Origin: Mytilus edulis
Taxonomy: Eukaryota
DNA: 64,000 bases
Assembly (NCBI RefSeq): GCF_963676685.1
Contig: NC_092349.1
Location: 86,056,001 to 86,120,000, forward strand
Reading direction: 5' to 3'
Shown here piece after piece: positions 16,818-64,000 of this stretch (positions are counted from its first letter, which is position 1; each line of letters begins with the position of its first letter). The notes beneath the pieces are model-generated. The model worked only from the letters and a program-made list of their open reading frames with translations. It ran no database searches and was not told the origin of the DNA. The position numbers and the translations under genes are program-made.

Positions 16818-18095
16818 ATGGTTAACCACTCATATGTGATTCCAGGCCACTACGAAAATTTCCTCCAAGATGACCAAGCTATCCAAACCTATATGGAAAA
16901 ATCAGTTGAGGATAGAAATGACCATTCCATACAAAATACTTTTCACCAAGAGGCCTACTATCTCTACTTTGTGGCTGTGCTTGGTATATTACTGAACCTT
17001 GTGGTGGTATTGTTTGTTTTTATACGACAAACATTGAGGAAAATGACAAGTGCCTTTTTAATACATGCATGCTTTTTGGATTGCCTGAAAGCAGCTTATT
17101 GCATTCCAATAGCAAACAATCTTGTAACGCAGAAGAAACCTGCCGACTGTGATTTCTTTGGAGCAACTTACGTATTAATTGTAACTGCCTCTGTGTTTAA
17201 CATGCTGGCCATGGTTTGTACAGAGGCATACACTTTTGGAGAAATAAATATCGGTGGGAATTCAAGAGGATCATTGTGTTGTATTCTTTTTGGAATAATA
17301 CTTGTTTACATAGCTAGTACAGTGTTGCATCTTGGTCCAACGTTGATCGGTGGATATTTTGATTTTCATCCTGAAATTGGCAGCTGCTCATTTGTCTTGG
17401 GCAAAGAGACAGGATATGTGGCTCATGCAATGTGGATTGCAATATCCACCCTAGCAATAGTAGGAATAATCCACTTCATATGTAAGTTATATAAAGAAAT
17501 TCAAGTGAATCATACAAATCGTGTATCAATGCTTGTGAGGTCCTCTCTTACAATAACGGATGAAACACTGACTTCTTGTAATGTTCAAAATTTCATAAAT
17601 GATTCCAGCCATCGTGCAAAAATTTTCATTCTCAACACTATTGCCTTTGTGATTTGTTGGTACCCGCTATTTTTGTTACTATTAATAGATGTGCACTTCA
17701 AAGTATCTCCGAAAGTTTACCAATCATTCAGTTTCATCGCGTGGACACAAGGAAGTATTCAACCAATGATCTACATTCTGTTCGACAGACATATTCACTT
17801 ACTAGCAAAATATATCTATTGTGATCGTTACCGACAATACCGCTTGACAACAATTGCCAATCTGATGAACCAACAAATAACCGCTGCTGCCGCGGCAAAC
17901 AATGCACCAAGTTCCGTTCCGTGTTATGATATCGAGGACAATGAAATAGTATATGGTGTCTCAAACAACGAAAATCAAAGTTCTCATAGTACTTCTCCCA
18001 GTACAATGTTACAACTAAGCCATGAGTCTACACCTTTATCAAATATTCAAATAGAAGACCGAACATTGAACCAAGACATTGGACTACCATGTTAG
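16818..18095 (+). CDS. Orphan class A (rhodopsin-like) GPCR, SREB/GPR85/GPR173-like; uninterrupted CDS, 425 aa
   Basis: Seven hydrophobic segments; TM1 GILLN, TM2 FLIHACFLDCLKAAYCIP (compare SREB FLLDLCxxDxxRSAxCFP), Cys at the top of TM3 and in ECL2 (GSCSF), TM6 CWYP, TM7 WTQGSIQPMIY. The subfamily call is from remembered similarity only. Confidence 0.9.
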   Translation: MVNHSYVIPGHYENFLQDDQAIQTYMEKSVEDRNDHSIQNTFHQEAYYLYFVAVLGILLNLVVVLFVFIRQTLRKMTSAFLIHACFLDCLKAAYCIPIANNLVTQKKPADCDFFGATYVLIVTASVFNMLAMVCTEAYTFGEINIGGNSRGSLCCILFGIILVYIASTVLHLGPTLIGGYFDFHPEIGSCSFVLGKETGYVAHAMWIAISTLAIVGIIHFICKLYKEIQVNHTNRVSMLVRSSLTITDETLTSCNVQNFINDSSHRAKIFILNTIAFVICWYPLFLLLLIDVHFKVSPKVYQSFSFIAWTQGSIQPMIYILFDRHIHLLAKYIYCDRYRQYRLTTIANLMNQQITAAAAANNAPSSVPCYDIEDNEIVYGVSNNENQSSHSTSPSTMLQLSHESTPLSNIQIEDRTLNQDIGLPC

Positions 18096-29908: not shown

Positions 29909-32096
29909 AGTTTAAACAGTATTTATTAATGAAAAATGTCAAGACAAATATTACAATGTTACATAAAGTTCAAATATGGGATTCGGAAACAAGTTTGGAA
30001 AAACTTTTATAAATCCGTCTCCCTAAAAAAAAACAAAAAAAAATCTATTTAACATACAATATTACGTGCCAACAGTATATTCATTTTATGGTAGCATATG
30101 ATACATTGAATAAATAAACACACACACACACGCAAAAAAAAAAATAATAATAAAAAAAAATACAAAAAATACAAAACAAATAAAATAAAGGAAAACAATA
30201 AAAAGTGAGGGAAAAAAAACAAAAAAAACAAAAAAAAACAAACAACAAAAACAGTCAACTCTTATTTACTTTTCTAGACAGTCACTGGAACCAACACACA
30301 CGTTCGACCACAATCAATTACAACGGACAATCCACTCGATTTTACATCATATTTAAAAAAAAAAGTATAAATATATAATATATATATACATATACTAGAT
30401 TAACTTTCAAAACGTTTTGTTTTATTTATGTATTCAGAAACTTTATGAAATATTTGCATATTGTCCTCGTCAGCTTTTAGACCATCCCCATATAAGATAA
30501 TCTTAAGATTAAAACAAGAGATCGTCCCGATAGTATCCCTTCGAATTTCATTATATTTTGGACATTTGAAGAAATAATGAGAAGTAGTTTCTACTTTACC
30601 ACAGGAACACAGTGCGTTCTCGATTAGATTTTTTTAAAATAGATGGTCCCTTAGAACACTACTCTGGAGCCTTATTCTTGCTAAGCATATCTGTTCTCTT
30701 CTACAGCCGAAGTGAAAATACAATGGTATTTTATTAATATTTTGAGAGAGATAAGTCTTAAAACCTGATTTTGATTGATTTAGACGGATGTCGTCAGGAA
30801 TATTGTTCCAAAGGTTTACTACGGCTGGTAGAAATGACTTTTGATAATAGCTTGTTCTGCATAATACAGTTTGTAAATTTGAAGACCCCCTGGTCCTGTG
30901 GTCGTGTAGATCTAGTCTCTGATTTGGGACTAACACAGAAAGATAATCAGGACAATCTCCGTGAAACATTTGATGAAATTTTAATAACTTATGTTTGTCA
31001 CGTCGAGACTGGAGAGTTTCCCAACCGGTTTCATCGTACAGCAACTGTCTCGATGTTATCTTAGTACCACCTGTAACGATTCTTGCTGCTTCTAGTTGTA
31101 AGTTTTCCAGAGATGTTTTCAAATAATTAGGTATATTATCCCAGACAATGTCCCCATATTCTAAGACTGGGCGAATGAAAGATAAATAAATAGTTTCTAA
31201 ATGTTTCCTTTTAAGTTTAAACTTTAACTTCCGGAATAATGCTAATCTAGGAATAGCCTTATCAATAATCATTTTTACATGATTATTCCAGCTTCCATCT
31301 TCATTTATAATAACCCCTAAATGCTTATGCGACTCAACTTCTTTTATGATATTAGTATCCATATACACTGGCGGGTGGTGGGGTTTTTGATGCCTTTTTG
31401 AAATGGTCATTATTTCTGTTTTGTTTGGATTGAAATTGACAAGCCATTGCTTTGACCAATTATGTATTTTCTCAATATCTTTATTTAACTTTTCTGCCGC
31501 TTCATATTCGTTATCAACCACTATATAAATTGAGGTGTCATCAGCAAAAAGTTTTATATCACATTCGATGTCATTAACTATGTCATTTATATAAATGAGA
31601 AATAAAATAGGACCCAAGATAGACCCTTGGGGTACCCCAGCTGAGACATGTTCGTTATTGGACATTTCTCCACCAATGACAACCTGTTGCCTTCTTGAGT
31701 TTAAATAGCTTTCAAACCAAAGTAACAAGTTACCATTAATTCCTATTTTTCTAAGCTTATATAGTAAGCCTTTATGCCAAACTCGGTCGGAAGCTCGACT
31801 AATGTCGCAGAAGATTACCCTGACCTCTTTCCCTTCATCTAATGCTTTACCAAAATCATTAATAATACATAGTAGTTGGTTTACTGTCGAATCACCAGGG
31901 ATGAAACCAGACTGGAATTTTGTTAATAAAGAATTTGTAATAATAAAGTTAAAAAGGTATTTAAAAATGCATCTCTCCATTGTCTTACCAATGTTAGACA
32001 GCAAAGATATAGGTCTATAATTAAGTAAAAATCTGGGCCACCTTTGTTCTTATAAACAGGTATAACATTTGCTAGTTTCCACACATCTGGAACATA
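29909..32096 (-). mobile_element. 5'-truncated non-LTR retrotransposon (LINE, CR1/L2-group-like) with RT remnant, 3' UTR and 11-bp TSD
   Basis: ORF 32004-30634 carries RT motifs QSGF, DISRASDRVWH, GVPQGSILGPILFLIYIND, LFADD and HKHLGV. The frame continues past a premature TAA into CSCG..ETTSHYFFKC (CCHC) and stops at 30400. TTTGTATGTTT is duplicated at 29898-29908 and 32097-32107. Confidence 0.93.
30400..32096 (-). pseudogene. Disrupted LINE ORF2 (reverse transcriptase plus C-terminal zinc knuckle)
   Basis: No endonuclease domain (5' truncation), probable frameshift near 32020-32040, premature stop at 30634-30636, and Phe-to-Ser change in the DxxxAFD motif. Confidence 0.88.
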
Positions 32097-46600: not shown

Positions 46601-48000
46601 AAACCATCAGTCTAAATTATACAAAAAACACGAGAAACGGGAAACCCTTATGAACCATATCAACAAACGACAACCACTGACCAAACGAAAACCACTGACC
46701 AACAGATCCTAATTTGTTTTGTTATAGATAAGATCGTTAGTTTTTCGTACGAATTGTTACTAATTTTTCATTTTTGGGCTTTTATAGCCGACTAGACGGT
46801 GTTTTTTTCTTTTCCCTGTTTGAGGATGTTCTGTTGTCTATGCATGCTTGCTTATATATATCCACTCCATTTGAACTCTGACTGATTGTTGTCTCTTTTG
46901 TAATAATACCCCAATTACTTATTTTTAGATAGTTTCAATAATTTTTCTTAAAAATGACACTTAAAAAAAGAGAGAATAAGAGCTTTTTATATATTAAGGA
47001 ATGCGTTTTAGTTAAATTTCGCTAAATATATGTAATTTGTTGTATTTGATTAGAAATGATTGAATTCATTTCCATGATACGCGGGTTATGTTCTTCACAT
47101 ATATTTAATGATGGTATAATACTAAGGATTGTACTTGCTATTCATATGATGAAGACATAATCTTTCAATCAGTTTAATTGAGGTCTGGAGCTGGCATGTC
47201 AGTAACTGCTAGTAGTCCTTTGTTTATTTATGTATCATAGTCATTTTGTTTAGTTTCTTTTGTTACCTATTTTGACATTGGACTCGGACTTCTTTTGAAC
47301 TGAGTGTTACGGTGCGTAATTGCTGGGTGTTTGTTTTTTCTACATTGGCTGTTCTTTGGTCGTGTTGTTGTCTCTTTGACACATTCTCCATTTCCAGTCT
47401 CAATTTTATTTTCATCATAGCCTTGATTGAAATTCTATATTTGCGCAAGACGCGTGCTTCGTCTACAAAAGACTCATAAGTCAATACATTCTAAAATAAA
47501 TCATAAAAAAAAATAATAATAAACAAAATATTTCATTTAAAAATAATTTTATAAGCCTGACTTAGGTCACGTACAGAAATATAGATGTTAGTTGAACAAA
47601 TATTGATTGTTTTAAACTTCATGTTTAATCTCTGACACGAAGATTTATAGTTTTAATAATATGTTTTAGCTAGCAATTGCAATATGTCTATAAACATGAT
47701 AAAGTCAAGTAAAACCTATACTGAAAAAACGCAGAACTATTCCTTTTCATGAAAGTATTTTTATTTTTAAATTTATAAATTTTCTCTATTTTTGTTTATA
47801 CTGATGGTAAACATCATTATGCTAATTCATCCTCGATCTTATTGAGATAATTCTACAATGGTCTACGCATGACGAACAAGGTCAAGTAAAAATACATTTT
47901 TTATCTGTGTACTAAACAATGTTTTGAGGTGAATATTTTTATGACTATTCGTAGTACTAGTGTATATGTATTATATATCCTTTTATGATAATATAATAAA

Positions 48001-48181
48001 ATGAGTATCATGTTAAGACGAAGTTTTCTATCTGGATTGAACAAATGGATATATATAAACAGCGCATACTGCTCTTCTGCATGGAATTTCACGGGAATCC
48101 AGTTGCAGTCAAAGAACTATGGTCATAATGTTCGGAAGCTTGGAACTGCTGCTGCTGCAACTTCAGACTTTGTCAAACCGG
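48001..48181 (+). CDS. hcp: HCP exon 1: putative mitochondrial targeting presequence (60 aa)
   Basis: [60 protein letters not shown] is R/K/S/L-rich with no acidic residue until D56. The phase-1 donor G|GTAGGT fits the exon 2 acceptor TTTCAG|AC (gives Asp then Met). Confidence 0.78.
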
Positions 48182-51100
48182 GTAGGTACTAAATACTGAA
48201 TATGAGACGCATATATAAATAATAAGTGTGACAGTGTATATGTAAAAATTGAATGTCCCCGTTTTTAGCATCGTTACACGATTAGGAACATGGGAAAAGA
48301 GCTGTCGATATTCTGATCAATCATGATCAACAAATATATAAACTCATCTATATATTATTAATAATAACTTTAACTTGATTAGAATTTTTTTTCATTATTT
48401 GTACAAACAAACAAACAAACAAACAAACAAACAAACAAACAAACAAACAAACAAACAAACTAATACCTTTATTAGAGTCTCTCCTCTTTAAAATATTTGA
48501 GTATACAACTGAATATAATATTAACAGACCAACTCACAAAAAAGCTACTTTAAAATGATTTATTTGAGACTGTAAAACACACATTAAAAATACATTTATA
48601 TTATACATATCATATATCAATACTCAAATTATTAAAATTACTTTCTACATTACATACACTATTAAAAACATTGCAAATCTGCATATTCTGGGCATTCTAA
48701 CAACACAATGTATGTTTCTTGTGTATATTATGTTTGCATTTTAACCCGTCAGGGATTGACCATTTTGCAATAAAGTTATGTATATATATATAAAAAGTGA
48801 AGTTAACATTTTTGTTAAAAAAAAATATTTAAACTTGAAGCAACATAAAGGTAAGGAACCCCTTAAGGTAATAACGCTCGCCAGTTTGATGAGTCGTTTG
48901 TTTGATAAATATACCTTGGGTAAAGAAAAAATGAAATAGAAAAAAAACGTCTTATTTGGAGTCAAAGTTTTTGTGTGGCCTGGTTTTGGTCTCTAGAATT
49001 TCATGTTCTCATACTCATATTGGATTCCGTTAGTTGGTAATTCTACTCTCAATATATATTGTTATATGGGCCGTGTAATTTGGTAAATAAAAGTAATTCA
49101 TTCTATTCTATAGTAGTCAATCGACAACCTGTTTAAAGTTTGTTGTAGAAAATGTAGGAAAGAGACGAGGTAGTAATGGCAAATGTGGCAAATGTGGCAA
49201 ATGTGGAAATTGATAGAAAATAAATAAAGCTGTACAAAATAAAAACTGATGCAACAAAAACAGGATTTACAAATTCAAATACCTTACTGTCCCTCTATCT
49301 TTTAAAAGTTTAATGCACATCAAGTTTGTGAAGTGTATTTAATATATATTCAAATTATTACACCAAGTGATAAACAAACTGTTACAGCATGTTAAAGTCG
49401 GTATGATAGAACGTAAATTACAATTTAAATGCGAACTGTATTCTGGTTGAATGCATTTTATCAAATATTCATCCGGGTAGATCAATCAAAATACCATTAA
49501 ATTAAACGCAGAACTGTTAAATCAGATTACCTATTCATCTTACCAAACCCTTCCCATAAAGTACTTTAGTTGAATATATACAGCATAGGGTGATGTAATA
49601 CGACAATAAATATCATTGCTTGAGATTAATATACCAAAATGAAGCTACATGTTGGGCTTCTAATAAAAGTTCATTTTTTACTGAAATTTCCTCGTAAGCT
49701 TATCTAATACACTGAATATGGAGGTTATCAAGTGATTTATCGATCCTTTTCTTATAAATCCTAATTATAAGCGTATACGTGCCAAGCTTCAGTCACGTAC
49801 TTGCACTATGCACATTTTGTACCATGACTTGACAATAAATTTTTCATTTCATCTATTTGAGTCACTTAAAAACAAATCGTTGAAGATTTCGTAATTTGAA
49901 AAATACAAGAAGCAGAGTTCTTTTTTTAACTAAACATAAAAGATACCTCGAAATAGCTATAATGGTGTAGTTTAAGTTTTCGCTAAGTTTTAAGTACAGA
50001 TAATACGATGGAACAGGTCCCAATTATTATATGAATAAAAATAAGATTGTCGTCATTGAAGCCTTAAAACATATTTTTGGTAAAAAATATTTTGCTGATT
50101 ATTTTCGATTTCAACTTGAATACAGATTTTGTTTAAGAGAAGATTTTTAATAAATAGGACAGACACCAAGTGATAGCAATTGCTCACAAATTTCCTACAG
50201 GACACGTGTTTAATTAAACCATACATGTATATTGGATTGTAGCACTCATACATATATTCGCAAAACTTCCAACTTTTTTTAACCCCTTTTTCATGTATAA
50301 TTAGTCAACAGAAAAGGGGGGATCAAAGATTGGTATAGTAACTATACAAATCATTGAACATATCAATAAGTCTTTGATAGCCAACAAATTTATTGTTTAT
50401 GTATTATTTTTGGTAAGTGCTCCAATGTGTAATGTCGGACTTCTTCTATACTACTAACATGACTAAAGGAAGAGACCTATTTCATTGAGCCGCATCTCCT
50501 TTGAAACCATACAAAGTCGGAAGTGATATGAAGTATAAATGTAGTGTTTTGTAATTCCCAAATTTGTCTTTGAAACAATCTTTTTCCACAGAAAACGCCA
50601 ATTTTTGAGAAATAACCCATTTCGGAGACCGTTATCGATCCGTGTCTTATAAGCTTTCAGTCGAAGTACTGCACGCGAAATTTAAGGTTTATGTACCCTT
50701 CTGTAGCCATTTTTGTACGATTTTTTCAAACCTCAATTGTATCAAAACTAAAGATATAATAAATAATAGAGATAGGCCATTTAGTACATGTTCCAAGGGG
50801 AAACTTGATGCAAAACATTATTTTTTACTGTTTCATTGCATTTGATAGAAAAAGAGGACTTTGTGGCAAATAAATCAAGATTTTTATAGAAAATCCACAG
50901 CCTTTAATACAGAGATTTTTGTTATAAAATTTGAAACATAAATTACTCACTTGATTTTCTATGATGTGCTAGTGTTTATTTTTTACAAAAAGTTCTAAGT
51001 AACCTGTAAATTCCAAAACACCTCGTGCTGAGTCACTAAAGTCGAGCGCACCCTAAAAGGTGTACTTGATTTTGGCCATATTTATACTTGTCTTAACCAA

Positions 51101-54100
51101 TAACTACATTTATAAACTTGTTTTAAGGAAATCAATGCTAGCACTGCATGCAATAATCCTATATCTATCAGTCATCAAATTGCCAAATATGAGAGTACAA
51201 GGATAAAGGCTGTGGATTTTCTATAAAAATCTTGATTTATTTGCCACAAAGTCCTCTTTTTCTATTAAATGAAATGGAACAGTAAAAAATAATGCTTTGC
51301 ATCAAGTTTCCCCTTGGAATATGTACAAAATGGCCTATCTCTATTATTCATTATATCTGTAGTTTTGATACAATTGAAGTTTGAAAAGTTCGTACAAAAA
51401 TGGCTACAGAAGGGTACATAAACCTTAAAAATTCTTTGTTTCAACACATGCCCAATTGTACCACGATTTCGCGGGTTTCATCTAGTGATATACAAATAAA
51501 CAAGTCATGTTATAAAACCAAAATATCTTAACACGGTTGCTTTACCCGAATATATGTTTAACATCGTTTCCCTTTACTAATTATATTGATTTATTGTATT
51601 TGTACTATTATTTCAGACATGTTTTGTTTCCAGTGCGAGCAGACCAAGAGCCGAAAAGGCTGTGTAACCGTAGGAGTATGCGGTAAAACGTCACAGGTAT
51701 CTGCACTACAAGATCTACTAATGTATGCTGTGCAGGGGTTGTCCATGTATGCCAATAGAGCTATTAAATCAGGCATCACTATGTCTAAAGAATGTGACCT
51801 ATTTATACAGCAAGCTATGTTTAGGTACATACAATATTCTTAAAGAAGATAGACATAAAGCATGGACAAAGAGAGGAATTTTTTCGATTAAATACAATTT
51901 GGGATAGATGAATTTGTTCTAAACATCGGATATGGGAATATACACAATAGAAAAGGATGACCATAATGAAAAAGAATAGATAAAAATGATATAAAATTAA
52001 AAAATAGATCAATTGAGTGATAAAATTTAAAGATTAGAAAAATAATTGTCCAACGAATCTTAATAGAGAAAATGGCCTAACATTATAGAATGCAAAAATG
52101 AAGACCTACCACCAAGACCCTCTTAACTGACACAAAGTCTCCTATGTCTATATAAATACTATCTATTTCTGCTATAAAGGCAAACGTGAATATAACTAGT
52201 CTAATTTAGAATTAACGCCCGTATAAAGCAGAAATAAAAAGTATATGTCTCATAAGTTCTGCATAGCGTAAGGTTACGACAGGGCATATATATTTGGTTT
52301 AAGGAGTGTAAGTTGTAATTGAGTCTGAGATCAATTAAGGCACCACGCAAATCCACACAATCTTTTGAAATGATAGCCATCGCGGTTAAGAGTCACTGTC
52401 TAAAGAACGAAATCATAGATGCTAGTATTTCAAAGTCTTTATATGGGTGTCTGCCTCGAGGTGCATACTTATTGTTCAGAATATTTAAACATAGGCAATG
52501 CATTTGTCTGTACTGACTTTTGCATTCTTTGTTTTTAAGCACCGAACATAAAGATAGGAATATGCAATATTTTCGTCGATAAAGCAATACTTGACACTAT
52601 GGGGATACACATTAAAATAATATCATTATTTATATATTAAACTACTTTATTGCCTGCTTGAGACTACTATTTGCTCTTACTTTACAGCACATTGACAAAT
52701 GTGAACTTTGACCAGGATCGCTTTCCGGAATATATCAAAACTGCAATCAAACATCGCGATGCCATCAAGAAAATTATGGAGGAAAAATCATCGCAAACTC
52801 TTGACGAAAAACTCAAGCATGGTCCTGCTAGCTGGGTTCCAGAATCATATGATTTGACATATTTAGAAGACGAAGGTAAATTACTAAGGCATGCTACGTA
52901 CTGATACTAATTTAAGTCTTGTCAACGATTTACAATGGAACTAAGTTTTTGTATTTGCGGAGGTTAAGCACAGGCACTTTGTCTCTGAAAAACAATAATC
53001 CATATATAACCATTTATTAAAGTATATCAATCTAATTAAAAACCGATATCTCATCGCTCCCGTTTTCTGATATGTCGGGACGCGACACATCAGAAAACGG
53101 GAGCGATCAGAGATCGGTTTGACATATCAGAAAACGGGAACGATGAGAGATCGGTTTTTAATTAGATTGAAGGTATATAGGATTTTTTTCTGAGAAAAGT
53201 GCCTGTGGTTTGTGATTGAGATTGGTTCGGTACCACTACCAACTGACTTTGTTATAGAAAATCATGTAAATTTGAGACGTGTTCACTTATCGAAATAAAA
53301 TATGTATTACATGGTAATCAAGAAAAAGACTTGAGTATAAAAACAACGCGAAACACCGTGTGATCTTTGTTGTGACATGCTTAGCTCGAGTAAGTGAGGT
53401 CTTAAGCTGTAATCCAACCTTGGTCAAATCAGTTGTATTATCAATGCTGCTCCATCGAAAACTCGGTAACTACGATTATAAATAAGAACAAATATTGTTT
53501 GGCTTCTTGAGTCATTAGCCAAAGGATTGAAGGGTGATATCCCACCTGTGGCCTATTGCAATTTAAGATACGTGCATTTTTAAAAGTTCGACTCAGTGAG
53601 TTAGTACAAATGTACCACACGAGAAACTCGGCAGCTTTCCCTACTTAAAAACAAATAATAATACAGAGAAGTTTTATTCGTTTGATATTAAAATGCCATC
53701 TTCAAGAATAATTATGCACGTATTTACGGCTTGAAATAGAACAGTCATCATTTATTCATGATCACCAGTTGACCAAGTTAAATCTTTAAAAACGTGCTGT
53801 CAATCTGTGGTCAATCGGTAGACGGTTGACTTCTAAGTATCATTTTCCTACTATAAAATTAAGAATGGAAATGGGGAATGTGTAAAAGAGACAACAACCC
53901 GACCAAAGAGCAGAAATCAGCCGAAGGTCACGAATGGGCCTTCAACACAGCAAGAAAAAACCCCACCTGCAGGCGGGCTTCAGCTTTTTATGTCTATGAC
54001 AAAAGACCTCGAAATTTTCTTTATAAAAATCTTATGTAGGCGAAACGCGTGTCTTAGTTGATATAAACAGTACTTATTTTTTTTAAAAATCTTACATTAA

Positions 54101-57100
54101 AGTAGAACAATTTTTCATAGCACGTGCCTTCATTAACAAATACTATATAACTAATCTGGGATCACTTTATTTTTGAAACTTGATATGCATAATCTCTATA
54201 AAAATGAGTGTTGATCATGCATGAATGAATTATAACCGACTTATCTTTACAACTTTGTTTACTTTGTAAATGTAGGTCTAAAAGTTGGTGTATTAGAAAA
54301 CCAGAGTATTTATGGACCAGACGTGAATGGTGTTCGTTACATGACCATATATGGCATTAAAGGATTATCTGCATACGCCTGCCATGCTAATGCGCTTGGA
54401 GAAGAAGACCCTGAGGTTTCCACTTCCTTATACGAGGTATATTGTTGAATAACTCATACTCATCACATTCCAATGGTTAATTTCCCTCGTGGATAAGTCA
54501 GAAGACCAAATAAGAAAAAAAAGTGTTTTTTTTTTGTTATCCTGATAACTCTATAAATGAAAATCTCTCATAAGTCAGTGTGGCTACATGTTAACTTAGA
54601 TTTAAATCTTGTTTGTATGTTTGAGTACACAAATGAAATATTCTGTCCGTCTTTCTGTCTAATATGTTATGAAATTCCCCGAAGTCCTTACGTATACATC
54701 CATTCGTTGTCAAACATTTTTGGTAAGCGAATTTTACATAAAAAAGGTTTTTCTTTATTCGGCATTGATGAAAACGGTCACACCTGTACATTTTACATGA
54801 ACATGGAGCTTATGTACTATAGTATGACTATCTATTACTCGACTAATTAAATAGAACAAACAAAAAAGAAAACGGAGTAATTATAAAGCTATGTTTTATT
54901 ATTTCTTTTTTCAGCTCACGTTTTCTTTAAAAATGATGATGTCTGCTGATTTTTACAATTCAGGTTTTGGACTTTTTGACTAGTGGAACAGAAGAAGAGC
55001 GTCATGATCTGACTACGAATCTAAAACTTGCTCTAAAAGTAGGGGAAATAAACCTCCGAGTGATGGAGCTGTTAGATAAAGGTCACCGGAAGCAGCTTGG
55101 TATACCATCTCCCTCAACAGTTAACAGAGCACCTGTCCAAGGAAAGGTACACTCTTAAAGTATTTTATTAGTTACCAATGAGACAGGAGTTTGAGCAAGT
55201 TTACAAGAGCACAAACAATTTGTTTTAACGAAAATAATACTACCAATTTCGCGTGTCCGAAGAGATTTTCTGAATTTAACTTCCTTTTTATTTCAAGTTA
55301 CGAGCAAAAAAAAACAACAACATGTAAGCATTTTTAACCCCTTTTTGACCATTTTTGGTAGCTTGGTACCTTGATACTAATTCCGCTATATATGGGCATG
55401 TATTGTCCTATGTCGTTACTTTTGTTGACCAGTATACGTTGACTTAAGTTATAAATGTCGTGTTCTTACCTATAGTAACGTGCTGCGTATAGATTATCGG
55501 GTTTTCAACACATTGATATCGTAAAATATCAGCCGCGAGCCACAATGTGAACCTTTTTGGCGAGTAAGCGTAGCGAACGATCTAAAAAGTTTCACATTGT
55601 GTCGAGCGGCTGATATTTTACGATATCTATACGTAGAAAACCCGATTATCTGTTTATCGTCTTTTTTCCTCTCCCTAAGACAGTTTTACGCTTGACGAAA
55701 GCAAGCTTGATAACGTGTGACGTCTCTGATAACTTCTCCTCTCACATTGTGACGTCGCTGATAATGCCTGGTCTCGTTTTGAAGTTTTGATATGAGAATT
55801 ACTGAGCGACAGAGCAGGGTGATATAGGCGTAGGGAAGGACAATAATATATATGATATTACATTCATTCATTTCTTTATTTCTTCTAGATCACGAGATTC
55901 AATGAACAACTATATGTAATCAGATTAAATTACAAAAGTTTGCAAATCATAATAACACAATATAATATTACAATATGTACAATAAGTACAGTTAATATGT
56001 AATTGTTTATAACTAAAGAATTCGAACATGTCGTCAAGAAAATTGCTCTCATTAACGACGGTTCATGCACTGGCACATATACGAATCGTCGTTCTCGCTA
56101 GTCTGTTATACATGCAGCGACACAGTGTGCAACGTGCATGTGGCAAAGCTTCCAAAAACTGTCGGTGTCGATATTGATTGTTGTTACGTGATTGCCAAAA
56201 ACAATGCTTGTCGTATGAATCAAGTTCCACAAATAAATGCAATGGAAGTTTTTCAATTATGAACTCCCACCACACATCTCTGATTGTATGAGTTCCACAA
56301 CAGCTATAACATGGATGTACATGCATCTAAAACTGACTGTTACATGGCTCGCGCGTGCCTCCTGAGATTGATACAATTCACCTTTTTTCTTTACTTTTGC
56401 TTCTTTCACTCAGGTAGCAAATTGTTAGATTCCACTACTAAAAAACTATTATTAGCAAATATAATGTCATCATTAAAGCCTACATTTCATGGTTTCGCGT
56501 GTTGCTTTTAAATTTACTTCTTAAACAAATGGATTGACAATAAAGGACTTACCATTAATTTTTTAAATAAAAGCAAGGGAAAAGGCAAATTAAATACTTT
56601 CAGATAAACTGGCTTGACAAATAACAACTACAGTTTGTTATTTTACTCCCATTTTTCCCTTTATGATTCAATAAGAAATAATGCATATTTTAAGTTCTTG
56701 CTCGTAATATAACACACCAAGGGTGATATGATTGCTCAAATGAAAGGACCAACCGTTCGAAGGTTTCCTTTGTGCAATCCTAGAGGTGGATCCATTTTTT
56801 ATATCCGATATTACACTGTATGTATGAGCCTAAGCTATGTACATGCTTGTATATTTAAATGTGCATACAAGAAATAACGTTTACATCTGTATTGTAGTGT
56901 ATACTGGTTTCAGGACATGACCTGATGGATCTTTATGCTATTCTGAAACATACTGAAAAAGAAGGAATAAACGTCTACACTCACGGAGAGATGTTACCAG
57001 CACACAGCTATCCCATTTTGAGAGAGTTCAAGGTACATACCCATATACACAAATGACACATATTAACGAATAAAGATCTGAGAAAACTATGTTTTACCTA

Positions 57101-60100
57101 TTATATATATTGTTTAAGGTTTAATGAGTGGAGCTGGAACTGCCTTCTTATCCTACACTTGCAGTTATCCATGTTTCGGTGGGAGTCATGGTTTATGTGG
57201 TTTATTGACTATCGTGATCTAATGTGTTTGATTCCTTCCCGTCGGCATTCAATTTTGTTCTAAAACCAAAATGTCACCTTTAACAAGGCAGAATGATAAT
57301 GCTTTTTTTAAACAAACAAATATCGAAATAGAAATATTTTCTTAATTGACCAATACTAACATAACATACATCTTGGACTATCTGAAGATACATATTGTAT
57401 TATCTGATTAAGAAATTTCGTTATTCAAATTTTGTCTATGGATTCAAAAATGAAGTAAACTTCATAAACTTTATTCAGGGACCAGCTAAGTCCCACCTCG
57501 GTCGCGGGATATTCTCTCTGAGTTGAAGACTCATTGGTGGCCTTCGGCTGTTGTCTGCTATTTGGTCGGGTTGTTGTCTCTTTTACATATGCCCCGTTTT
57601 CATTCTCAATTTTATCGTAAAAACTTAGATATGACACTAAACTTCGACTTTGAACTTTTTCTGAAGTACATTTCATCTTCTCGTAGAATCTGGTTGGTCA
57701 GTTTGGTAGTGCATGGCAGAATCAGAAGATTGAATTTGGAACTTTTCCAGGACCAGTTGTCATAACAACAAATTGTGTTATCGAGCCTTTGAAGTCTTAC
57801 AGAGATAGACTGTATACTTTGAACGAGACAGGAATCCATGGAGTTAAACATATCAATTTGGAAAATAAAGAGGAAATTTCTCAATTGATAAACGTAAGCT
57901 TAAGGTAGATAGGGTGTCTTCCTCCATCTTGGATTTGGAAATACCAGAAAACAAGGTCTAGATCTTTAATAGAATGTGCAAATTTTTAGAGAAGTAGATA
58001 ATTCATGTGTAAGAAATTCCACTTCTACATAGAAAATGACATGTTTTATCATATTTATGATTGTATTTTACAAAAAACAGAAATTTTTTGTTCGAACAAT
58101 TTTTTTCCAACTTTGCCACATAAGGGGATGCAACTCAAATGCAAGGGCAGATAATGCAGATTATGGTATTTTTACAATAGAATGTGTTAGGAATTTCTCT
58201 ATTTTATTATGTAACAAGAAAACAGGTCCGGTGACCCCATTTTTTCTTTTTCTTAACTGAAAGCATACTATTAAAGCTATCTTCTCATATGTTATCTCAA
58301 AATTCTATGGTGTAGTTTACGCTTTATTGCAGAAAATTGGGGTTTCCATGCATAATCTATACAAAATTTGACAATTTTGAACACCGTGTAGCATGAATAA
58401 AAGCCCGGTGACCCATTCTTTTTATTACTTTTTTTTAAAAAGCATAATATAAACTTCATTTTGGCAAATTATTAAAAAATTCTATGGATTATAATTTAGA
58501 CACCCCATCTACCTTAACACGTATATATTTTCACTACTGTGGCAAGTATTGTCTAGAAAGGTTCCCAAGAGTGTGCAATTGAGATTTCATCATAAGATAC
58601 CTTAATGTATTTTGCCGTATCATAAAATAAGCTTTGTATTTGAAAAACGAAGAACAACGTACAGACAATCAAAATTTCACTATTGCGTTACATAATTTAT
58701 TTTTGGCAAAGAATGATTAAAAAAAAAAAATGCATCTGGTTAAATATAGTACACTCATCACAGATCTAGTTTGATAATTTGACGCGTGTTTTGTCTTTAA
58801 AAGAGTCATCAGTGACGCTAAAATAAAAAAGGAGTAGAAAAGGGCTCAACGAAGAAACAGTTTGCTCCATACACAGACAAAATTGAATTTCACTCGAGTC
58901 AATTTCACGTATATTTAATTTCAATGCGAATTTCACATCAAACGGGCTTATTCGTAAAAATCGCGTGATTATTATATTAAAATTGATACCAATTTCAATT
59001 TTGAAAAACGACACGTTTTGTAAAATAACTTGCATCAGATATCTCGTGACCTGACCTTGAACCTTACCTCACGTTTGAGAGATTATAACATGAAATGTAG
59101 AATGCACCTCAGTCCAGAAGAACTTCAAAAGAACAAGCATAAGACTGATTTTGTGTGAGAGAGTTTTAATACGACACAAGGGTTTACAAACTGAACGATT
59201 TCATTAATACTGAATTTTTAATGTAATATTTACAGCATGCTAGTTATGTAGTTATGGTCATTGTGGTCATTGATAAAGTAGAAACCATTTATAATATATC
59301 TAAATAACTTTATCATCCATTGAATGCGTGACACGTCCCTGAAGAAAATATTGCAAACAATTAGTTCAATTTTTGACCAAGACTACATTTACCTTTTAAA
59401 AAACCTGGTTCAACTCTCTGATACATGAATAGCGTTATATAGTTATAGGAATAGTGCAACTTATCAAAGCAACCTTCATAGGATAAGCTACTTATCAAAA
59501 TATATCTGTTTAATAATTTGTATGATCGGCTTGGCTTAGACGGATACATAATATTGTAAGGTATTCTACAGTTTGTTTTTCAGAACAAACATTTCTCATG
59601 AAATGAAAATGAAAGAAATTAAACACAGAATATGGAAATAAATAAATCCCTAAGGCTCGCACCCCCTTTTAAAAGAGATGAATACGAATGATATAATTTG
59701 AAAGTGTAAGTGCGGTGTTTGTAGAAGAGATCTACAATGAAATACATTTTGGAACACATTTTTGAAAAAGAAAATATAAAGAAATTAAACACAGTATATT
59801 GTAATATATAGTAGCTTCACATCCTTTTGTTTCAACAACGTTTCAACAAAGGTATGATTATATCATGAATTTTATAAGCGTAAGAGTGAAATGGGAAGGA
59901 GGAACCCTACAATGAAATATAAGGATAATACTTCTTCATTTCCAGCATGCAAAATCACTTCCTGGATTCGACGACAAGACAATTCAGAAGTTTGATAAAA
60001 ATACATTTACTGTCGGCTTTGGAAGAGAGATTATCTTAGATAATGCAGAAAAAGTGAGTTGTGTACAGCTTGGATTGTTTTATTTTTACTTATATTTTTA

Positions 60101-63100: not shown

Positions 63101-64000
63101 GCTATTTACAGTTTTTGAGTTAGCATTTAGTTTAAAGTATGACAAAGACTTGCACAACGGAGTTTGCATATTTAGATGTAGGTCTACACAATATAAGATT
63201 AAAAATGAAATAATGAAGTAAATCATGAATTGAATCGTACTACTGATTAAAAATTACTGTTAAAAAACAGGAACCTAATACTAAATATTAAAGAAGTAAA
63301 GCTTCTACAGTCGTCCTGTTGTACTACGTCAGGAATATAACAGTTGTTTTCCATTCGTTTGATGTGTTTGAGCATTTGATTTTGCCTTTTGATTCGGGAC
63401 TTTCCATTTTGAACTTTCCTTTGTGTTCGGTATTTTTTTTATTTTATTTTTTCACATGTTAAGAATTGAAAAAAATATACTGCAAGTTGTGATAACTTGT
63501 GTCCGATTTTTTTGTTAATTATCTCTCTCTCTCTCTGCATACAGCCTACTCTATTCTACTCTGTAATAAGAACGAAATGAACAACATATAAAAAGTAACA
63601 AAATCATATTAGTATATGGTGACTTGTAAACTAATAGTTGGTATAGACTTATATTAATCTGGTAATATTTTAGGTTCTTCAAGCAGTAGCCGATGGAGAT
63701 TTGACGAGAATATTTGTCATTGGTGGATGTGACGGTTCGGAACACAAACGTAACTATTTCAAAACATTGGCACACTCATTGCCCCCACAAACGCTTATAC
63801 TTACTATGGGTTGCGCTAAATATAGAATCAACGATAAAGACTATGGAACTCTGGGAAATACTGGAATCCCCCGACTTCTTGACCTTGGACAGTGTAATGA
63901 CAGTTATGGTGCAATAATGGTAGCTCAGGCACTGGCGTCGGCACTCAATACTGACATTAACAGTTTGCCTCTTTCTTTATCATTGTCGTGGTTTGAACAG
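48001..64000 (+). CDS. hcp: Hybrid cluster protein (HCP, prismane / hydroxylamine reductase), spliced gene with probable mitochondrial presequence; 3' end lies beyond the window
   Basis: Hand-spliced exons 48001-48181, 51617-51824, 52688-52875, 54276-54436, 54964-55146, 56898-57032, 57687-57893, 59946-60053 and 63674-64000+. All introns are GT-AG and phase-compatible, giving 566 stop-free codons. Motifs in the correct order: [101 protein letters not shown]. Confidence 0.97.
48403..48460. repeat. (CAAA)n microsatellite, probably the tail of a minus-strand retroposon fragment
   Basis: Perfect CAAA run; on the - strand AATAAA lies just upstream of (TTTG)n. Confidence 0.85.
50686..51424. mobile_element. 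Long-TIR TTAA-flanked MITE (Kolobok-like) in HCP intron 1
   Basis: Inverted arms of about 220 bp (50681-50906 and 51204-51429), highly similar, with TTAA at both ends; mirrored ORFs 50642+ and 51447- show the same symmetry. Confidence 0.88.
51617..51824 (+). CDS. hcp: HCP exon 2: [4Fe-4S]-binding Cx2Cx8Cx5C motif
   Basis: [46 protein letters not shown]...QAMF; boundaries tttcag| and |gtacat. Confidence 0.96.
52688..52875 (+). CDS. hcp: HCP exon 3
   Basis: (S)[28 protein letters not shown]...LEDE; boundaries ttacag| and |gtaaat. Confidence 0.95.
52969..53207. mobile_element. Second copy of the CACAGGCAC MITE with a nested palindromic element (53027-53170)
   Basis: Same termini as 43523-43611; internal inverted repeat TCAATCTAATTAAAAACCGAT...ATCGGTTTTTAATTAGATTGA. 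Confidence 0.8.
54276..54436 (+). CDS. hcp: HCP exon 4
   Basis: (G)[53 protein letters not shown]; boundaries tgtag| and |gtatat. Confidence 0.95.
54964..55146 (+). CDS. hcp: HCP exon 5
   Basis: [61 protein letters not shown]; boundaries ttcag| and |gtacac. Confidence 0.95.
55491..55651. repeat. ~160-bp palindromic element in HCP intron 5
   Basis: Arms AGATTATCGGGTTTTC..GATATCGTAAAATATCAGCCGC..CACAATGTGAA pair with their reverse complement around a GCGAGTAAGCGTAGCGAAC loop. Confidence 0.8.
56898..57032 (+). CDS. hcp: HCP exon 6 (His and Glu ligands of the hybrid cluster)
   Basis: [45 protein letters not shown]; boundaries tgtag| and |gtacat. Confidence 0.96.
57687..57893 (+). CDS. hcp: HCP exon 7
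   Basis: [69 protein letters not shown]; boundaries cgtag| and |gtaagc. Confidence 0.96.
57904..58513. mobile_element. TTAA-targeting MITE (Kolobok-like) in HCP intron 7
   Basis: TIR GGTAGATAGGGTGTCT / AGACACCCCATCTACC, flanked by TTAA on both sides. Confidence 0.85.
59946..60053 (+). CDS. hcp: HCP exon 8
   Basis: [36 protein letters not shown]; boundaries ttccag| and |gtgagt. Confidence 0.93.
61093..62424 (-). mobile_element. Deleted hAT5-type DNA transposon with transposase remnant, in HCP intron 8
   Basis: TIR CAGGGGCGTAGCTA / TAGCTACGCCCCTG; 5-bp TSD GGTTA. The - strand remnant ...[32 protein letters not shown] (61320-61622) resembles the hAT C-terminal dimerisation region of ZMYM1/THAP12-like transposases. 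Confidence 0.88.
63674..64000 (+). CDS. hcp: HCP exon 9 (runs to the window edge)
   Basis: [109 protein letters not shown]; acceptor ttttag|. Confidence 0.96.

What the first reader, a model, noticed from the sequence alone, without database searches (positions are those of the whole stretch)
48001..51640. Targeting peptide on its own exon, joined just before the bacterial start Met
Seen in the sequence: exon 1 encodes 60 aa with no resemblance to HCP. It is basic and hydroxylated, acid-free to residue 55, and has a cleavage-like VRKL|GTAAA. A phase-1 intron ends two bases before ATG TTT TGT (MFCFQC), where prokaryotic HCPs begin. Inference: the presequence was recruited as a module after the gene was acquired. 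The retained ancestral Met could also yield a cytosolic isoform through an alternative first exon or leaky scanning.
Basis: partly seen in the sequence, partly recalled or inferred. Interest (0 to 1): 0.78.

Follow-up and report, generated by a model that had tools for sequence, protein, structure and literature searches.

The report
Mussel HCP gene's separate targeting-peptide exon
A mussel nuclear gene for an iron-sulfur enzyme best known from anaerobic microbes really does splice a separate first exon, probably a mitochondrial address tag, onto the enzyme's old start, but the tag looks inherited from early eukaryotes and not added in mussels.

Summary
Observation confirmed. The 60-codon ORF at 48001-48181 is spliced, GT..AG and phase 1, to 51617, two bases before ATG TTT TGT. 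One RNA contig (run X9) and one raw RNA read (run X21) show the joint. The gene is a nine-exon, about 609-codon hybrid cluster protein (HCP, Pfam PF03063).

Interpretation partly supported. Exon 1 is basic, acid-free to residue 55 and single-copy, so it looks like a mitochondrial presequence. My crude helix test was not distinctive, and no predictor was available.

The extension is not a mussel or animal novelty. Twenty-three distinct eukaryote-type HCPs, including Pigoraptor, Chlamydomonas, Prymnesium, Lentomonas and Stygamoeba, carry 23-77 residue basic extensions ending right at MFC, often "..KPD|MFC" as here. Six of seven mussel exons place with these eukaryotic HCPs. The last exon's best tree agrees (support 94/95.7), but an AU test does not reject the alternative.

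An unnamed intron-rich metagenome contig (L097) has the same layout, with a phase-1 intron five bases before the ATG. Another eukaryote (L096) has no intron there.

A cytosolic isoform by leaky scanning is unlikely: six AUGs lie in exon 1.

Other notes of this scan on this same stretch (s1-837610, s1-837682) read it alike; I saw none on other DNA.

The parts
47981..48000 (+). 5' leader, minimum extent; holds a 3-codon upstream ORF (ATG at 47985)
   Evidence: The RNA contig of run X9 begins at 47981.
48001..48181 (+). Exon 1 coding part: 60 codons plus 1 base; N-terminal extension (putative mitochondrial presequence)
   Evidence: ORF. Spliced in RNA. No Pfam match. Single copy in the genome. 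Composition.
48182..51616 (+). Intron 1, phase 1, 3435 nt, GT..AG
   Evidence: Joint in the X9 contig and in one X21 read; sequence.
48405..48460 (.). (CAAA)n microsatellite inside intron 1
   Evidence: Read. Read laying skipped repeats at 48394-48469.
50681..51429 (.). Foldback element in intron 1: inverted arms 50681-50906 and 51204-51429 (226 nt, 95% complementary)
   Evidence: RNA-run reads cover it at depth 10-40, with opposite-strand joints, as expected of a multi-copy repeat.
51617..51824 (+). Exon 2: AC + ATG TTT TGT...; HCP N-terminus with Cys motif C-x2-C-x8-C-x5-C
   Evidence: Pfam PF03063 E=1.6e-11, profile positions 1-60. Both boundaries seen in RNA.
52688..52875 (+). Exon 3 (TLTNVNFD...)
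   Evidence: Acceptor seen in RNA. The 3' end is inferred from GT/AG and phase.
54276..54436 (+). Exon 4
   Evidence: Homology; boundaries inferred.
54964..55146 (+). Exon 5
   Evidence: Pfam E=1.1e-4; boundaries inferred.
56898..57032 (+). Exon 6 (..VSGHDL..THGEM..)
   Evidence: Pfam 27.4 bits; boundaries inferred.
57687..57893 (+). Exon 7 (..TTNC..)
   Evidence: PF03063 match, 55.7 bits; boundaries inferred.
59988..60053 (+). Exon 8 (..TVGFGRE..); the 5' boundary is uncertain (59979, 59988 or 59991)
63674..64000 (+). Exon 9, the last and largest. It runs 171 coding bases past the window end, then a stop codon. It holds GGCDG, GCAKY, GQCND and SWFEQKA.
   Evidence: PF03063 match, 184.7 bits. 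Translation with stop. PDB HCP chains match at E=5e-46.

Best explanation
This is the first coding exon of a nuclear, nine-exon, about 609-codon gene for a hybrid cluster protein (HCP, also annotated hydroxylamine reductase; Pfam Prismane). Earlier notes of this scan call the genome a blue mussel.

Shown: exon 1 (48001-48181) is spliced by a GT..AG phase-1 intron to 51617. A 60-residue HCP-unrelated extension plus one Asp therefore precedes the conserved MFCFQC start.

Inferred: the extension is a mitochondrial matrix presequence. The precursor is imported and cut, perhaps after R45-K46-L47. The enzyme receives its iron-sulfur clusters in the matrix. There it reduces NO or hydroxylamine when the animal's mitochondria run without oxygen.

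Also inferred: the extension was not added in mussels. It is the mussel version of an N-terminal extension shared by a wide clade of eukaryotic HCPs, one of which (Acanthamoeba) has been shown to be mitochondrial. The intron at the junction is old enough to be shared with at least one other intron-rich lineage.
For: Splicing: one search shows the X9 contig with GT..AG joints at both ends of exon 2, and one X21 read from a separate study.

Coding use of exon 1:
- Its frame runs into exon 2.
- The RNA variant differs from the genome in exon 1 by an in-frame 6-nt deletion at 48049 and five substitutions. By my reading of the codons these are two synonymous changes, one double change in a single codon and one further replacement.
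- Exon 2 has one change in 207 nt, and it is synonymous.

HCP identity: PF03063 matches exon by exon across profile positions 1-503, and PDB HCP chains match at E=5e-46.

Presequence-like make-up: 7 K/R, 1 D/E, first acid at residue 56. Only 2 of 46 control ORFs are as acid-free.

A shared eukaryotic trait:
- 30 of 133 HCPs of >=450 aa in the set have >=15 residues before MFC.
- Named ones are Pigoraptor chileana, Chlamydomonas leiostraca, Prymnesium, Lentomonas and Stygamoeba.
- Asp stands at position -1 in 9 of 23 distinct eukaryote junctions, against 4 of 37 short-leader sequences. 'KPD' or 'KPE' recurs.

Placement of the mussel exons:
- The last exon lies inside the extension-bearing clade: SH-aLRT 96, and 94/95.7 in the careful tree.
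- Six of seven exons attach inside eukaryote groups on a fixed backbone.
- After adding Archamoebae, all eukaryote rows still sit on one side of a branch (SH-aLRT 82).

Same layout elsewhere: L097 has a 49-codon basic ORF with donor GAAG|GTAAGC (phase 1) and acceptor ttattgcag|AGCAGATG (phase 1). It shares the exon 2 3' boundary and the exon 3 start with the mussel.

Localisation of a relative: passages of PMC13632651 report Acanthamoeba HCP in mitochondria by proteomics and microscopy. They also cite companion work finding HCP homologues with predicted mitochondrial localisation across eukaryotes.
Against: - No targeting predictor could be run.
- The best 18-residue hydrophobic moment of exon 1 (0.345) equals the median of control ORFs, and 54% of shuffles reach it.
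- Net charge of the first 40 residues is only +4.
- The AU test does not reject a tree with the mussel's last exon outside the eukaryote clade (lnL difference 5.14, p 0.437).
- After Archamoebae were added, no starred clade holds the mussel exon.
- Exon 3 attaches among Bacillota and Spirochaetota. Exon 5's ten most identical rows include only one eukaryote-clade row.
- By plain identity the last exon is as close to bacterial HCPs (up to 63%, Planctomycetota) as to eukaryotic ones (up to 62%).
- In the full-length backbone, short class-III-like bacterial HCPs sit among some eukaryote rows. This may be long-branch attraction.
- L096, a eukaryote contig, has the extension and MFC in one exon. 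The intron is therefore not universal.
- Expression in three mussel RNA runs was almost nil.
- L097's exon 1 is a gene-model inference without RNA support.
Confidence: 0.62

Rival explanations
1. A bacterial HCP entered an animal (mollusc-line) genome by horizontal transfer. A host exon encoding a presequence was then captured in that lineage and spliced just upstream of the bacterial start codon.
For: The extension sits on its own exon, and the intron lies two bases from the ancestral ATG. By identity the last exon matches bacterial HCPs as well as eukaryotic ones. The AU test leaves a position outside the eukaryote clade open. My paper searches found no description of HCP in animals, which fits a patchy, transfer-like distribution.
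Against: Extensions ending at the same point, often with the same KPD/D junction, occur across distant eukaryotes, including a holozoan. Six of seven exons place with eukaryotic HCPs. Nine exons with kilobase introns, and boundaries shared with L097 and L098, point to long residence. No donor copy of exon 1 exists in the genome.
Confidence: 0.12
2. The extension is real and translated, but it is not a mitochondrial signal. It targets another compartment, or it is a plain N-terminal tail of a cytosolic enzyme.
For: The crude amphipathicity measure is not above controls, and the charge is modest. Passages of PMC13632651 say the Chlamydomonas and Nyctotherus localisations still await validation.
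Against: The extension is acid-free over 55 residues, rich in Ser/Thr and basic residues, starts [13 protein letters not shown], and has Arg at -3 of a plausible cut. I saw no hydrophobic signal-peptide core by eye. Relatives carry similar extensions, and one is experimentally mitochondrial.
Confidence: 0.18
3. Dual localisation. Most protein is imported, but some translation starts at the retained Met (51619) and gives a cytosolic form.
For: The Met is kept in 23 of 23 extension-bearing sequences.
Against: Six AUGs in exon 1 and one in the leader precede it. No transcript starting inside intron 1 was seen. The same Met is kept in 37 of 37 sequences that have a short leader before it, so it is conserved for reasons other than initiation.
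Confidence: 0.06
4. Exon 1 is only a 5' untranslated exon whose open frame is accidental, and translation starts at 51619.
For: 2 of 46 random ORFs in this AT-rich window are equally acid-free.
Against: The frame is open for 60 codons and in phase with exon 2. The indel in the RNA variant is a multiple of three. The first AUG has A at -3. L097 has an analogous in-phase ORF. Relatives have extensions of similar length.
Confidence: 0.03

Closest known systems
Mitochondrial HCP of Acanthamoeba castellanii (PMC13632651, Cell 2026; passages read) and the eukaryotic HCPs with predicted mitochondrial localisation that it cites from companion work
   Same: Same enzyme family. Each has an N-terminal extension ahead of the conserved MFC start. 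The mussel exons fall in the clade of extension-bearing eukaryotic HCPs.
   Different: The host is an animal. Localisation is untested here. I could not tell which protein in my set, if any, is the Acanthamoeba one. The companion study is not in the library and supplements were closed, so it may already list animal HCPs.
Bacterial and archaeal class I HCP (solved structures such as 1W9M, 1GNT, 8CNR; E. coli 7DE4)
   Same: Pfam PF03063. N-terminal Cys spacing C-x2-C-x8-C-x5-C. Conserved GHD, HGE, TNC, GCDG, GCxKxR, QCND and WFEQKA stretches.
   Different: The mussel gene has eight spliceosomal introns and a 61-residue N-terminal addition. It is 48-63% identical over the last exon.
Archamoebae HCPs (Mastigamoeba, Pelomyxa) and other protist HCPs discussed by Andersson et al. 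2006 (PMC1484493, passages read)
   Same: Eukaryotic HCPs. In the last-exon tree Archamoebae sit beside the group that holds the mussel (SH-aLRT 83).
   Different: P0040 has only 8 residues before MFC, and its relatives listed are 538-574 aa long.
[quoted passage not shown]
   Same: A targeting peptide encoded upstream of an intron that sits at or near the old start of a prokaryote-type reading frame.
   Different: In those cases the donor of the presequence is sometimes identifiable (for example an HSP gene for sdh3). Here no donor was found, and the event, if any, predates the lineage.

Membership tests
Hybrid cluster protein (Pfam PF03063 Prismane, HCP branch) | Profile match above the curated cut-off | tested here: met
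   exon-wise matches of 184.7, 55.7, 44.9 and 43.7 bits (cut-off 27) over profile positions 1-503 of 513; exon 2 scores 44 bits.
Hybrid cluster protein (Pfam PF03063 Prismane, HCP branch) | N-terminal four-Cys motif for the cubane cluster, class I spacing | tested here: met
   Exon 2 reads [19 protein letters not shown]. That this spacing means 'class I' is recalled knowledge; it is also stated in note s1-837682.
Hybrid cluster protein (Pfam PF03063 Prismane, HCP branch) | Ligands of the hybrid [4Fe-2S-2O] cluster (His, Glu, Cys residues) | tested here: inconclusive
   The conserved stretches SGHD, HGE, TTNC, GGCDG, GCAKY, GQCND and WFEQKA are all present. Assigning them to ligands is recalled, not computed here.
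Mitochondrial matrix presequence | N-terminal, rich in basic and hydroxylated residues, nearly free of acidic ones | tested here: met
   7 K/R, 11 S/T, 1 D/E, first acid at residue 56. Two of 46 control ORFs are as acid-free.
Mitochondrial matrix presequence | Amphipathic helix | tested here: inconclusive
   the best 18-residue hydrophobic moment is 0.345. This equals the control median, and 54% of shuffles reach it. L097's exon 1 scores 0.53, above the control 95th percentile of 0.502.
Mitochondrial matrix presequence | Processing-peptidase motif (Arg at -2 or -3) | tested here: inconclusive
   R45-K46-L47|G48 fits an R-3 pattern by eye. The motif is recalled, and no predictor was available.
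Mitochondrial matrix presequence | Import into mitochondria | not testable with these tools
   Needs a GFP fusion, organelle proteomics or an import assay.
Clade of eukaryotic HCPs with N-terminal extensions | Extension ending directly at the conserved MFC | tested here: met
   The junction VKP-D-MFC resembles KKPD, PKPD and AKPD|MFC in others.
Clade of eukaryotic HCPs with N-terminal extensions | Phylogenetic placement inside the clade | tested here: inconclusive
   The best trees place the last exon inside (96; 94/95.7). Six of seven exons place inside. The AU test gives p 0.437 for the alternative. Only single exons could be placed.
Presequence gained by capture of a host exon | Presequence on its own exon, with the intron at the junction to the old reading frame | tested here: met
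   likewise in L097.
Presequence gained by capture of a host exon | An identifiable donor gene or paralogous exon | tested here: not met
   The exon 1 peptide and its DNA match only themselves in the 1.37 Gb assembly.

The most novel reading that the evidence does not exclude
The phase-1 intron just upstream of the MFC Met is a relic of the event that first gave a bacterial HCP its mitochondrial presequence in an early eukaryote. An upstream exon was spliced onto a site a few bases before the bacterial start.

Three lineages would then keep the same intron, always in phase 1, shifted only by whole codons:
- the mussel, 2 nt before the ATG (shown);
- the unnamed intron-rich contig L097, 5 nt before the ATG (gene model);
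- a short-intron protist lineage, 8 nt before the ATG. This last case is inferred only from comparing protein P0033 with P0160.

Mussel mitochondria, the classic facultatively anaerobic animal mitochondria, would thus retain an ancient anaerobic NO/hydroxylamine-reducing enzyme.
Probability: 0.18. Interest if true: 0.65.

Novelty: new member of a known kind. Interest (0 to 1): 0.45.

Why it matters
HCP is regarded as an enzyme of anaerobic microbes. A 2026 paper showed it inside Acanthamoeba mitochondria and suggested that mitochondrial HCP may go back to early eukaryotes.

A spliced, expressed, presequence-bearing HCP in a mussel would extend that picture to an animal whose mitochondria are the textbook case of facultative anaerobiosis. 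It would also give a concrete candidate for handling NO or hydroxylamine during tidal anoxia.

The exon layout offers a small, testable case of how targeting peptides and introns relate in genes of bacterial ancestry. The splice itself is ordinary, and the general idea of mitochondrial HCP in eukaryotes is already in print.

Tried and rejected
- translated one base out of frame (my coordinate slip).
- Putting all exon pieces as separate rows into one full-length tree gave artefacts. For example, exon 4 attached to class-III rows that lack those columns. I replaced this with per-exon windows on a fixed backbone.
- One search failed on a thread setting. One search diagnosed it and one search corrected it.
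- I searched with P0156 and P0040 hoping to pull out annotated animal HCPs. Neither top-120 list named an animal. P0040 turned out to be an Archamoebae HCP.
- I did not use the third word search on the 60-residue exon 1. Its length filter (33-105 aa) cannot see full-length proteins.
- Contamination or a bacterial contig was rejected: spliceosomal introns, host-like GC of 0.30-0.35, RNA splicing, and flanking GPCR-like and reverse-transcriptase ORFs.
- A repeat or transposon origin of exon 1 was rejected.
- Paper searches for HCP in animals found no title on it. Searches were badly posed and returned unrelated papers. [quoted passage not shown]
- Supplements were closed, and the companion MitoTOL study is not in the library. 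Either may already list animal HCPs.

Full report
**What is there.** The window is G000:C6:86056001-86120000 of a 1.37 Gb assembly with GC near 0.32. Earlier notes of this scan call the genome a blue mussel; I did not check that.

An ATG at 48001, preceded by in-frame TAA stops, opens 60 codons ([16 protein letters not shown]...TSDFVKP). One more base (G, 48181) follows, then GTAGGT. At 51616 a pyrimidine-rich stretch ends in CAG, and exon 2 begins AC ATG TTT TGT. The split codon G|AC is Asp.

My first two translations were one base out of frame and are void.

**Is it spliced?** I laid four RNA runs on 47300-53000.

- Run X9 (metatranscriptomic, 2017) has a 1468-nt contig, depth 18.5. It lies on 47981-48180, 51616-51822 and 52686-52877, with GT..AG at both joints.
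- One read of run X21 (raw RNA-seq, 2026, another study) shows the 48180>51616 joint and the same sequence variants.
- Runs X22 and X23 show nothing at the joints. All three raw-read runs barely cover the exons.
- Exon 1 and exon 2 are single-copy in the assembly, so the spliced form is not a genomic retrocopy of this assembly.

The RNA variant differs in exon 1 by five substitutions and a 6-nt in-frame deletion. It differs in exon 2 by one synonymous change. That is the pattern of a coding but loosely constrained leader.

**The gene.** PF03063 (Prismane) matches exon by exon. With GT/AG sites and phase I get nine exons:

- exon 1: 48001-48181
- exon 2: 51617-51824
- exon 3: 52688-52875
- exon 4: 54276-54436
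- exon 5: 54964-55146
- exon 6: 56898-57032
- exon 7: 57687-57893
- exon 8: about 59988-60053
- exon 9: 63674 to 171 bases beyond the window, then a stop

These sum to 1827 nt, or 609 codons. Only the first two introns are seen in RNA. The last exon matches solved HCP structures at E=5e-46.

A truncated tandem copy lies about 26 kb downstream of the gene's stop (C6:86145968-86153673). It lacks exons 1 and 2, keeps 12 residues of exon 3, and has a stop in exon 5 and a frame break in exon 9. It is a pseudogene.

**Is exon 1 a targeting peptide?** Exon 1 has 7 K/R, 11 S/T and a single acidic residue at position 56. Two of 46 control ORFs in the window are as acid-free.

Its best hydrophobic moment is not above controls or shuffles. 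On sequence alone the case is suggestive, not strong.

**Relatives.** I searched the exon 2 peptide against 1.84 billion representatives. It found 2021 proteins at E<=1e-3.

Many hits carry extensions that stop exactly at MFC[FY]QCEQT. In the set then held, 30 of 133 proteins of >=450 aa had >=15 residues before MF. Those with 22 or more, after setting aside five that look like misplaced starts or fusions, give 23 distinct junctions. Most are basic and acid-poor.

Named members are Pigoraptor chileana (a unicellular relative of animals, 77 residues), Chlamydomonas leiostraca, a Prymnesium MAG, Lentomonas and Stygamoeba.

Asp precedes the Met in 9 of 23 distinct junctions, and 'KPD/KPE' recurs, as in the mussel (VKP-D-MFC). 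The Met is kept in 23 of 23, but also in 37 of 37 sequences with a short leader. Its retention therefore says nothing about alternative initiation.

**Where does the mussel gene belong?** I placed exons singly.

- The last exon (166 aa) falls in a clade of 32 rows, 29 of them extension-bearing (SH-aLRT 96).
- In a careful tree, the eukaryote clade plus the mussel is one side of a branch (94/95.7). The mussel sits with Chlamydomonas, Prymnesium and P0048 (95/89).
- The AU test does not reject the mussel lying outside the clade (p 0.437).
- On a fixed backbone, six of seven exons attach within eukaryote groups. Exon 3 attaches among Bacillota and Spirochaetota.
- Among each exon's ten most identical rows, the eukaryote-clade rows number 8, 6, 9, 1, 7, 10 and 5 for exons 2-7 and 9. 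The eukaryote clade makes up 30-31 of the 72-142 rows compared.
- Adding 11 Archamoebae HCPs and 10 more bacteria keeps all eukaryote rows together (SH-aLRT 82), but no strongly supported clade then holds the mussel exon.
- The best bacterial matches to the last exon reach 63% identity (Planctomycetota, Sumerlaeota, Hydrogenedentota, Nitrospirota). Many of these are short, class-III-like proteins.
- In the full-length backbone those short forms sit among some eukaryote rows, which I take for a long-branch effect.

**The intron elsewhere.** Of 80 metagenome contigs fetched with the exon 2 alignment, three are intron-bearing eukaryote genes.

- L097 and L098 share the mussel's exon 2 3' boundary (..ALF|R gt) and exon 3 start (TLTNVNFD), with kilobase introns.
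- In L097 a 49-codon basic ORF (acid-free to residue 48) ends at GAAG|GTAAGC, and the acceptor is ttattgcag|AGCAGATG. Both are phase 1, and the acceptor is five bases before the ATG.
- L096 has the extension and MFC in one exon (..KATD|MFC).
- Several genomic-ORF fragments (P0001, P0003, P0005, P0014, P0032, P0070) end at the same ..FR boundary.
- Comparing P0033 with P0160 suggests a 66-nt phase-1 intron eight bases before the ATG in a short-intron organism.

**Reading.** The splice and the exon are real. The extension is most likely a mitochondrial presequence, mainly because relatives carry equivalent extensions and the Acanthamoeba enzyme is mitochondrial by proteomics and microscopy (PMC13632651, passages).

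The extension is a trait of the eukaryotic clade, not a mussel addition. Whether it first arose by exon capture cannot be decided here. Leaky scanning to the inner Met is unlikely, because six AUGs in exon 1 and one in the leader precede it.

**Literature.** I found no paper on HCP in animals. The one exception is a single line in the Manila clam genome paper. Presequence gain next to introns is known for transferred organelle genes (PMC8317393, passages).

Noticed in passing
G000:C6:86145968-86153673 (L013-L015; about 26 kb downstream of the gene's stop codon): Tandem partial duplicate of the HCP gene, 93-97% identical in protein. It lacks exons 1 and 2 and has only 12 residues of exon 3. It carries an in-frame stop in exon 5 and a frame break in exon 9, so it is a pseudogene.
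   Followed up: partly
window 50681-50906 and 51204-51429: Inverted repeat of 226 nt, 95% complementary, with a 297-nt spacer, inside intron 1. RNA-run reads cover it at depth 10-40 with opposite-strand joints, as for a multi-copy foldback element.
   Followed up: partly
window 47352-47411, with similar stretches near 53840-54060 and 57490-57770: A roughly 60-nt core with very high depth in all four RNA runs (thousands in X9, hundreds in the raw-read runs) and many loose ends on both sides. Similar translated stretches occur in two introns of the gene. It looks like a highly abundant short repeat.
   Followed up: no
window 16818-18095 (+) and 30634-32004 (-): An intronless 425-aa ORF with a seven-helix receptor look, and a 456-aa reverse-transcriptase-like ORF. 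Neither was examined further.
   Followed up: no
L016-L050 (bacterial genome loci): The bacterial HCPs most identical to the mussel's last exon (58-63%) are mostly short forms of about 440 residues that lack the segment after the Cys motif. They come from Planctomycetota, Sumerlaeota, Hydrogenedentota, Nitrospirota and Myxococcota.
   Followed up: partly
P0076 (782 aa): An HCP whose MFC start is preceded by about 400 residues that look like a separate, flavoprotein-reductase-like domain. It may be a natural fusion in an AT-rich eukaryote. It was not analysed.
   Followed up: no
window 48405-48460: (CAAA)n microsatellite in intron 1.
   Followed up: no
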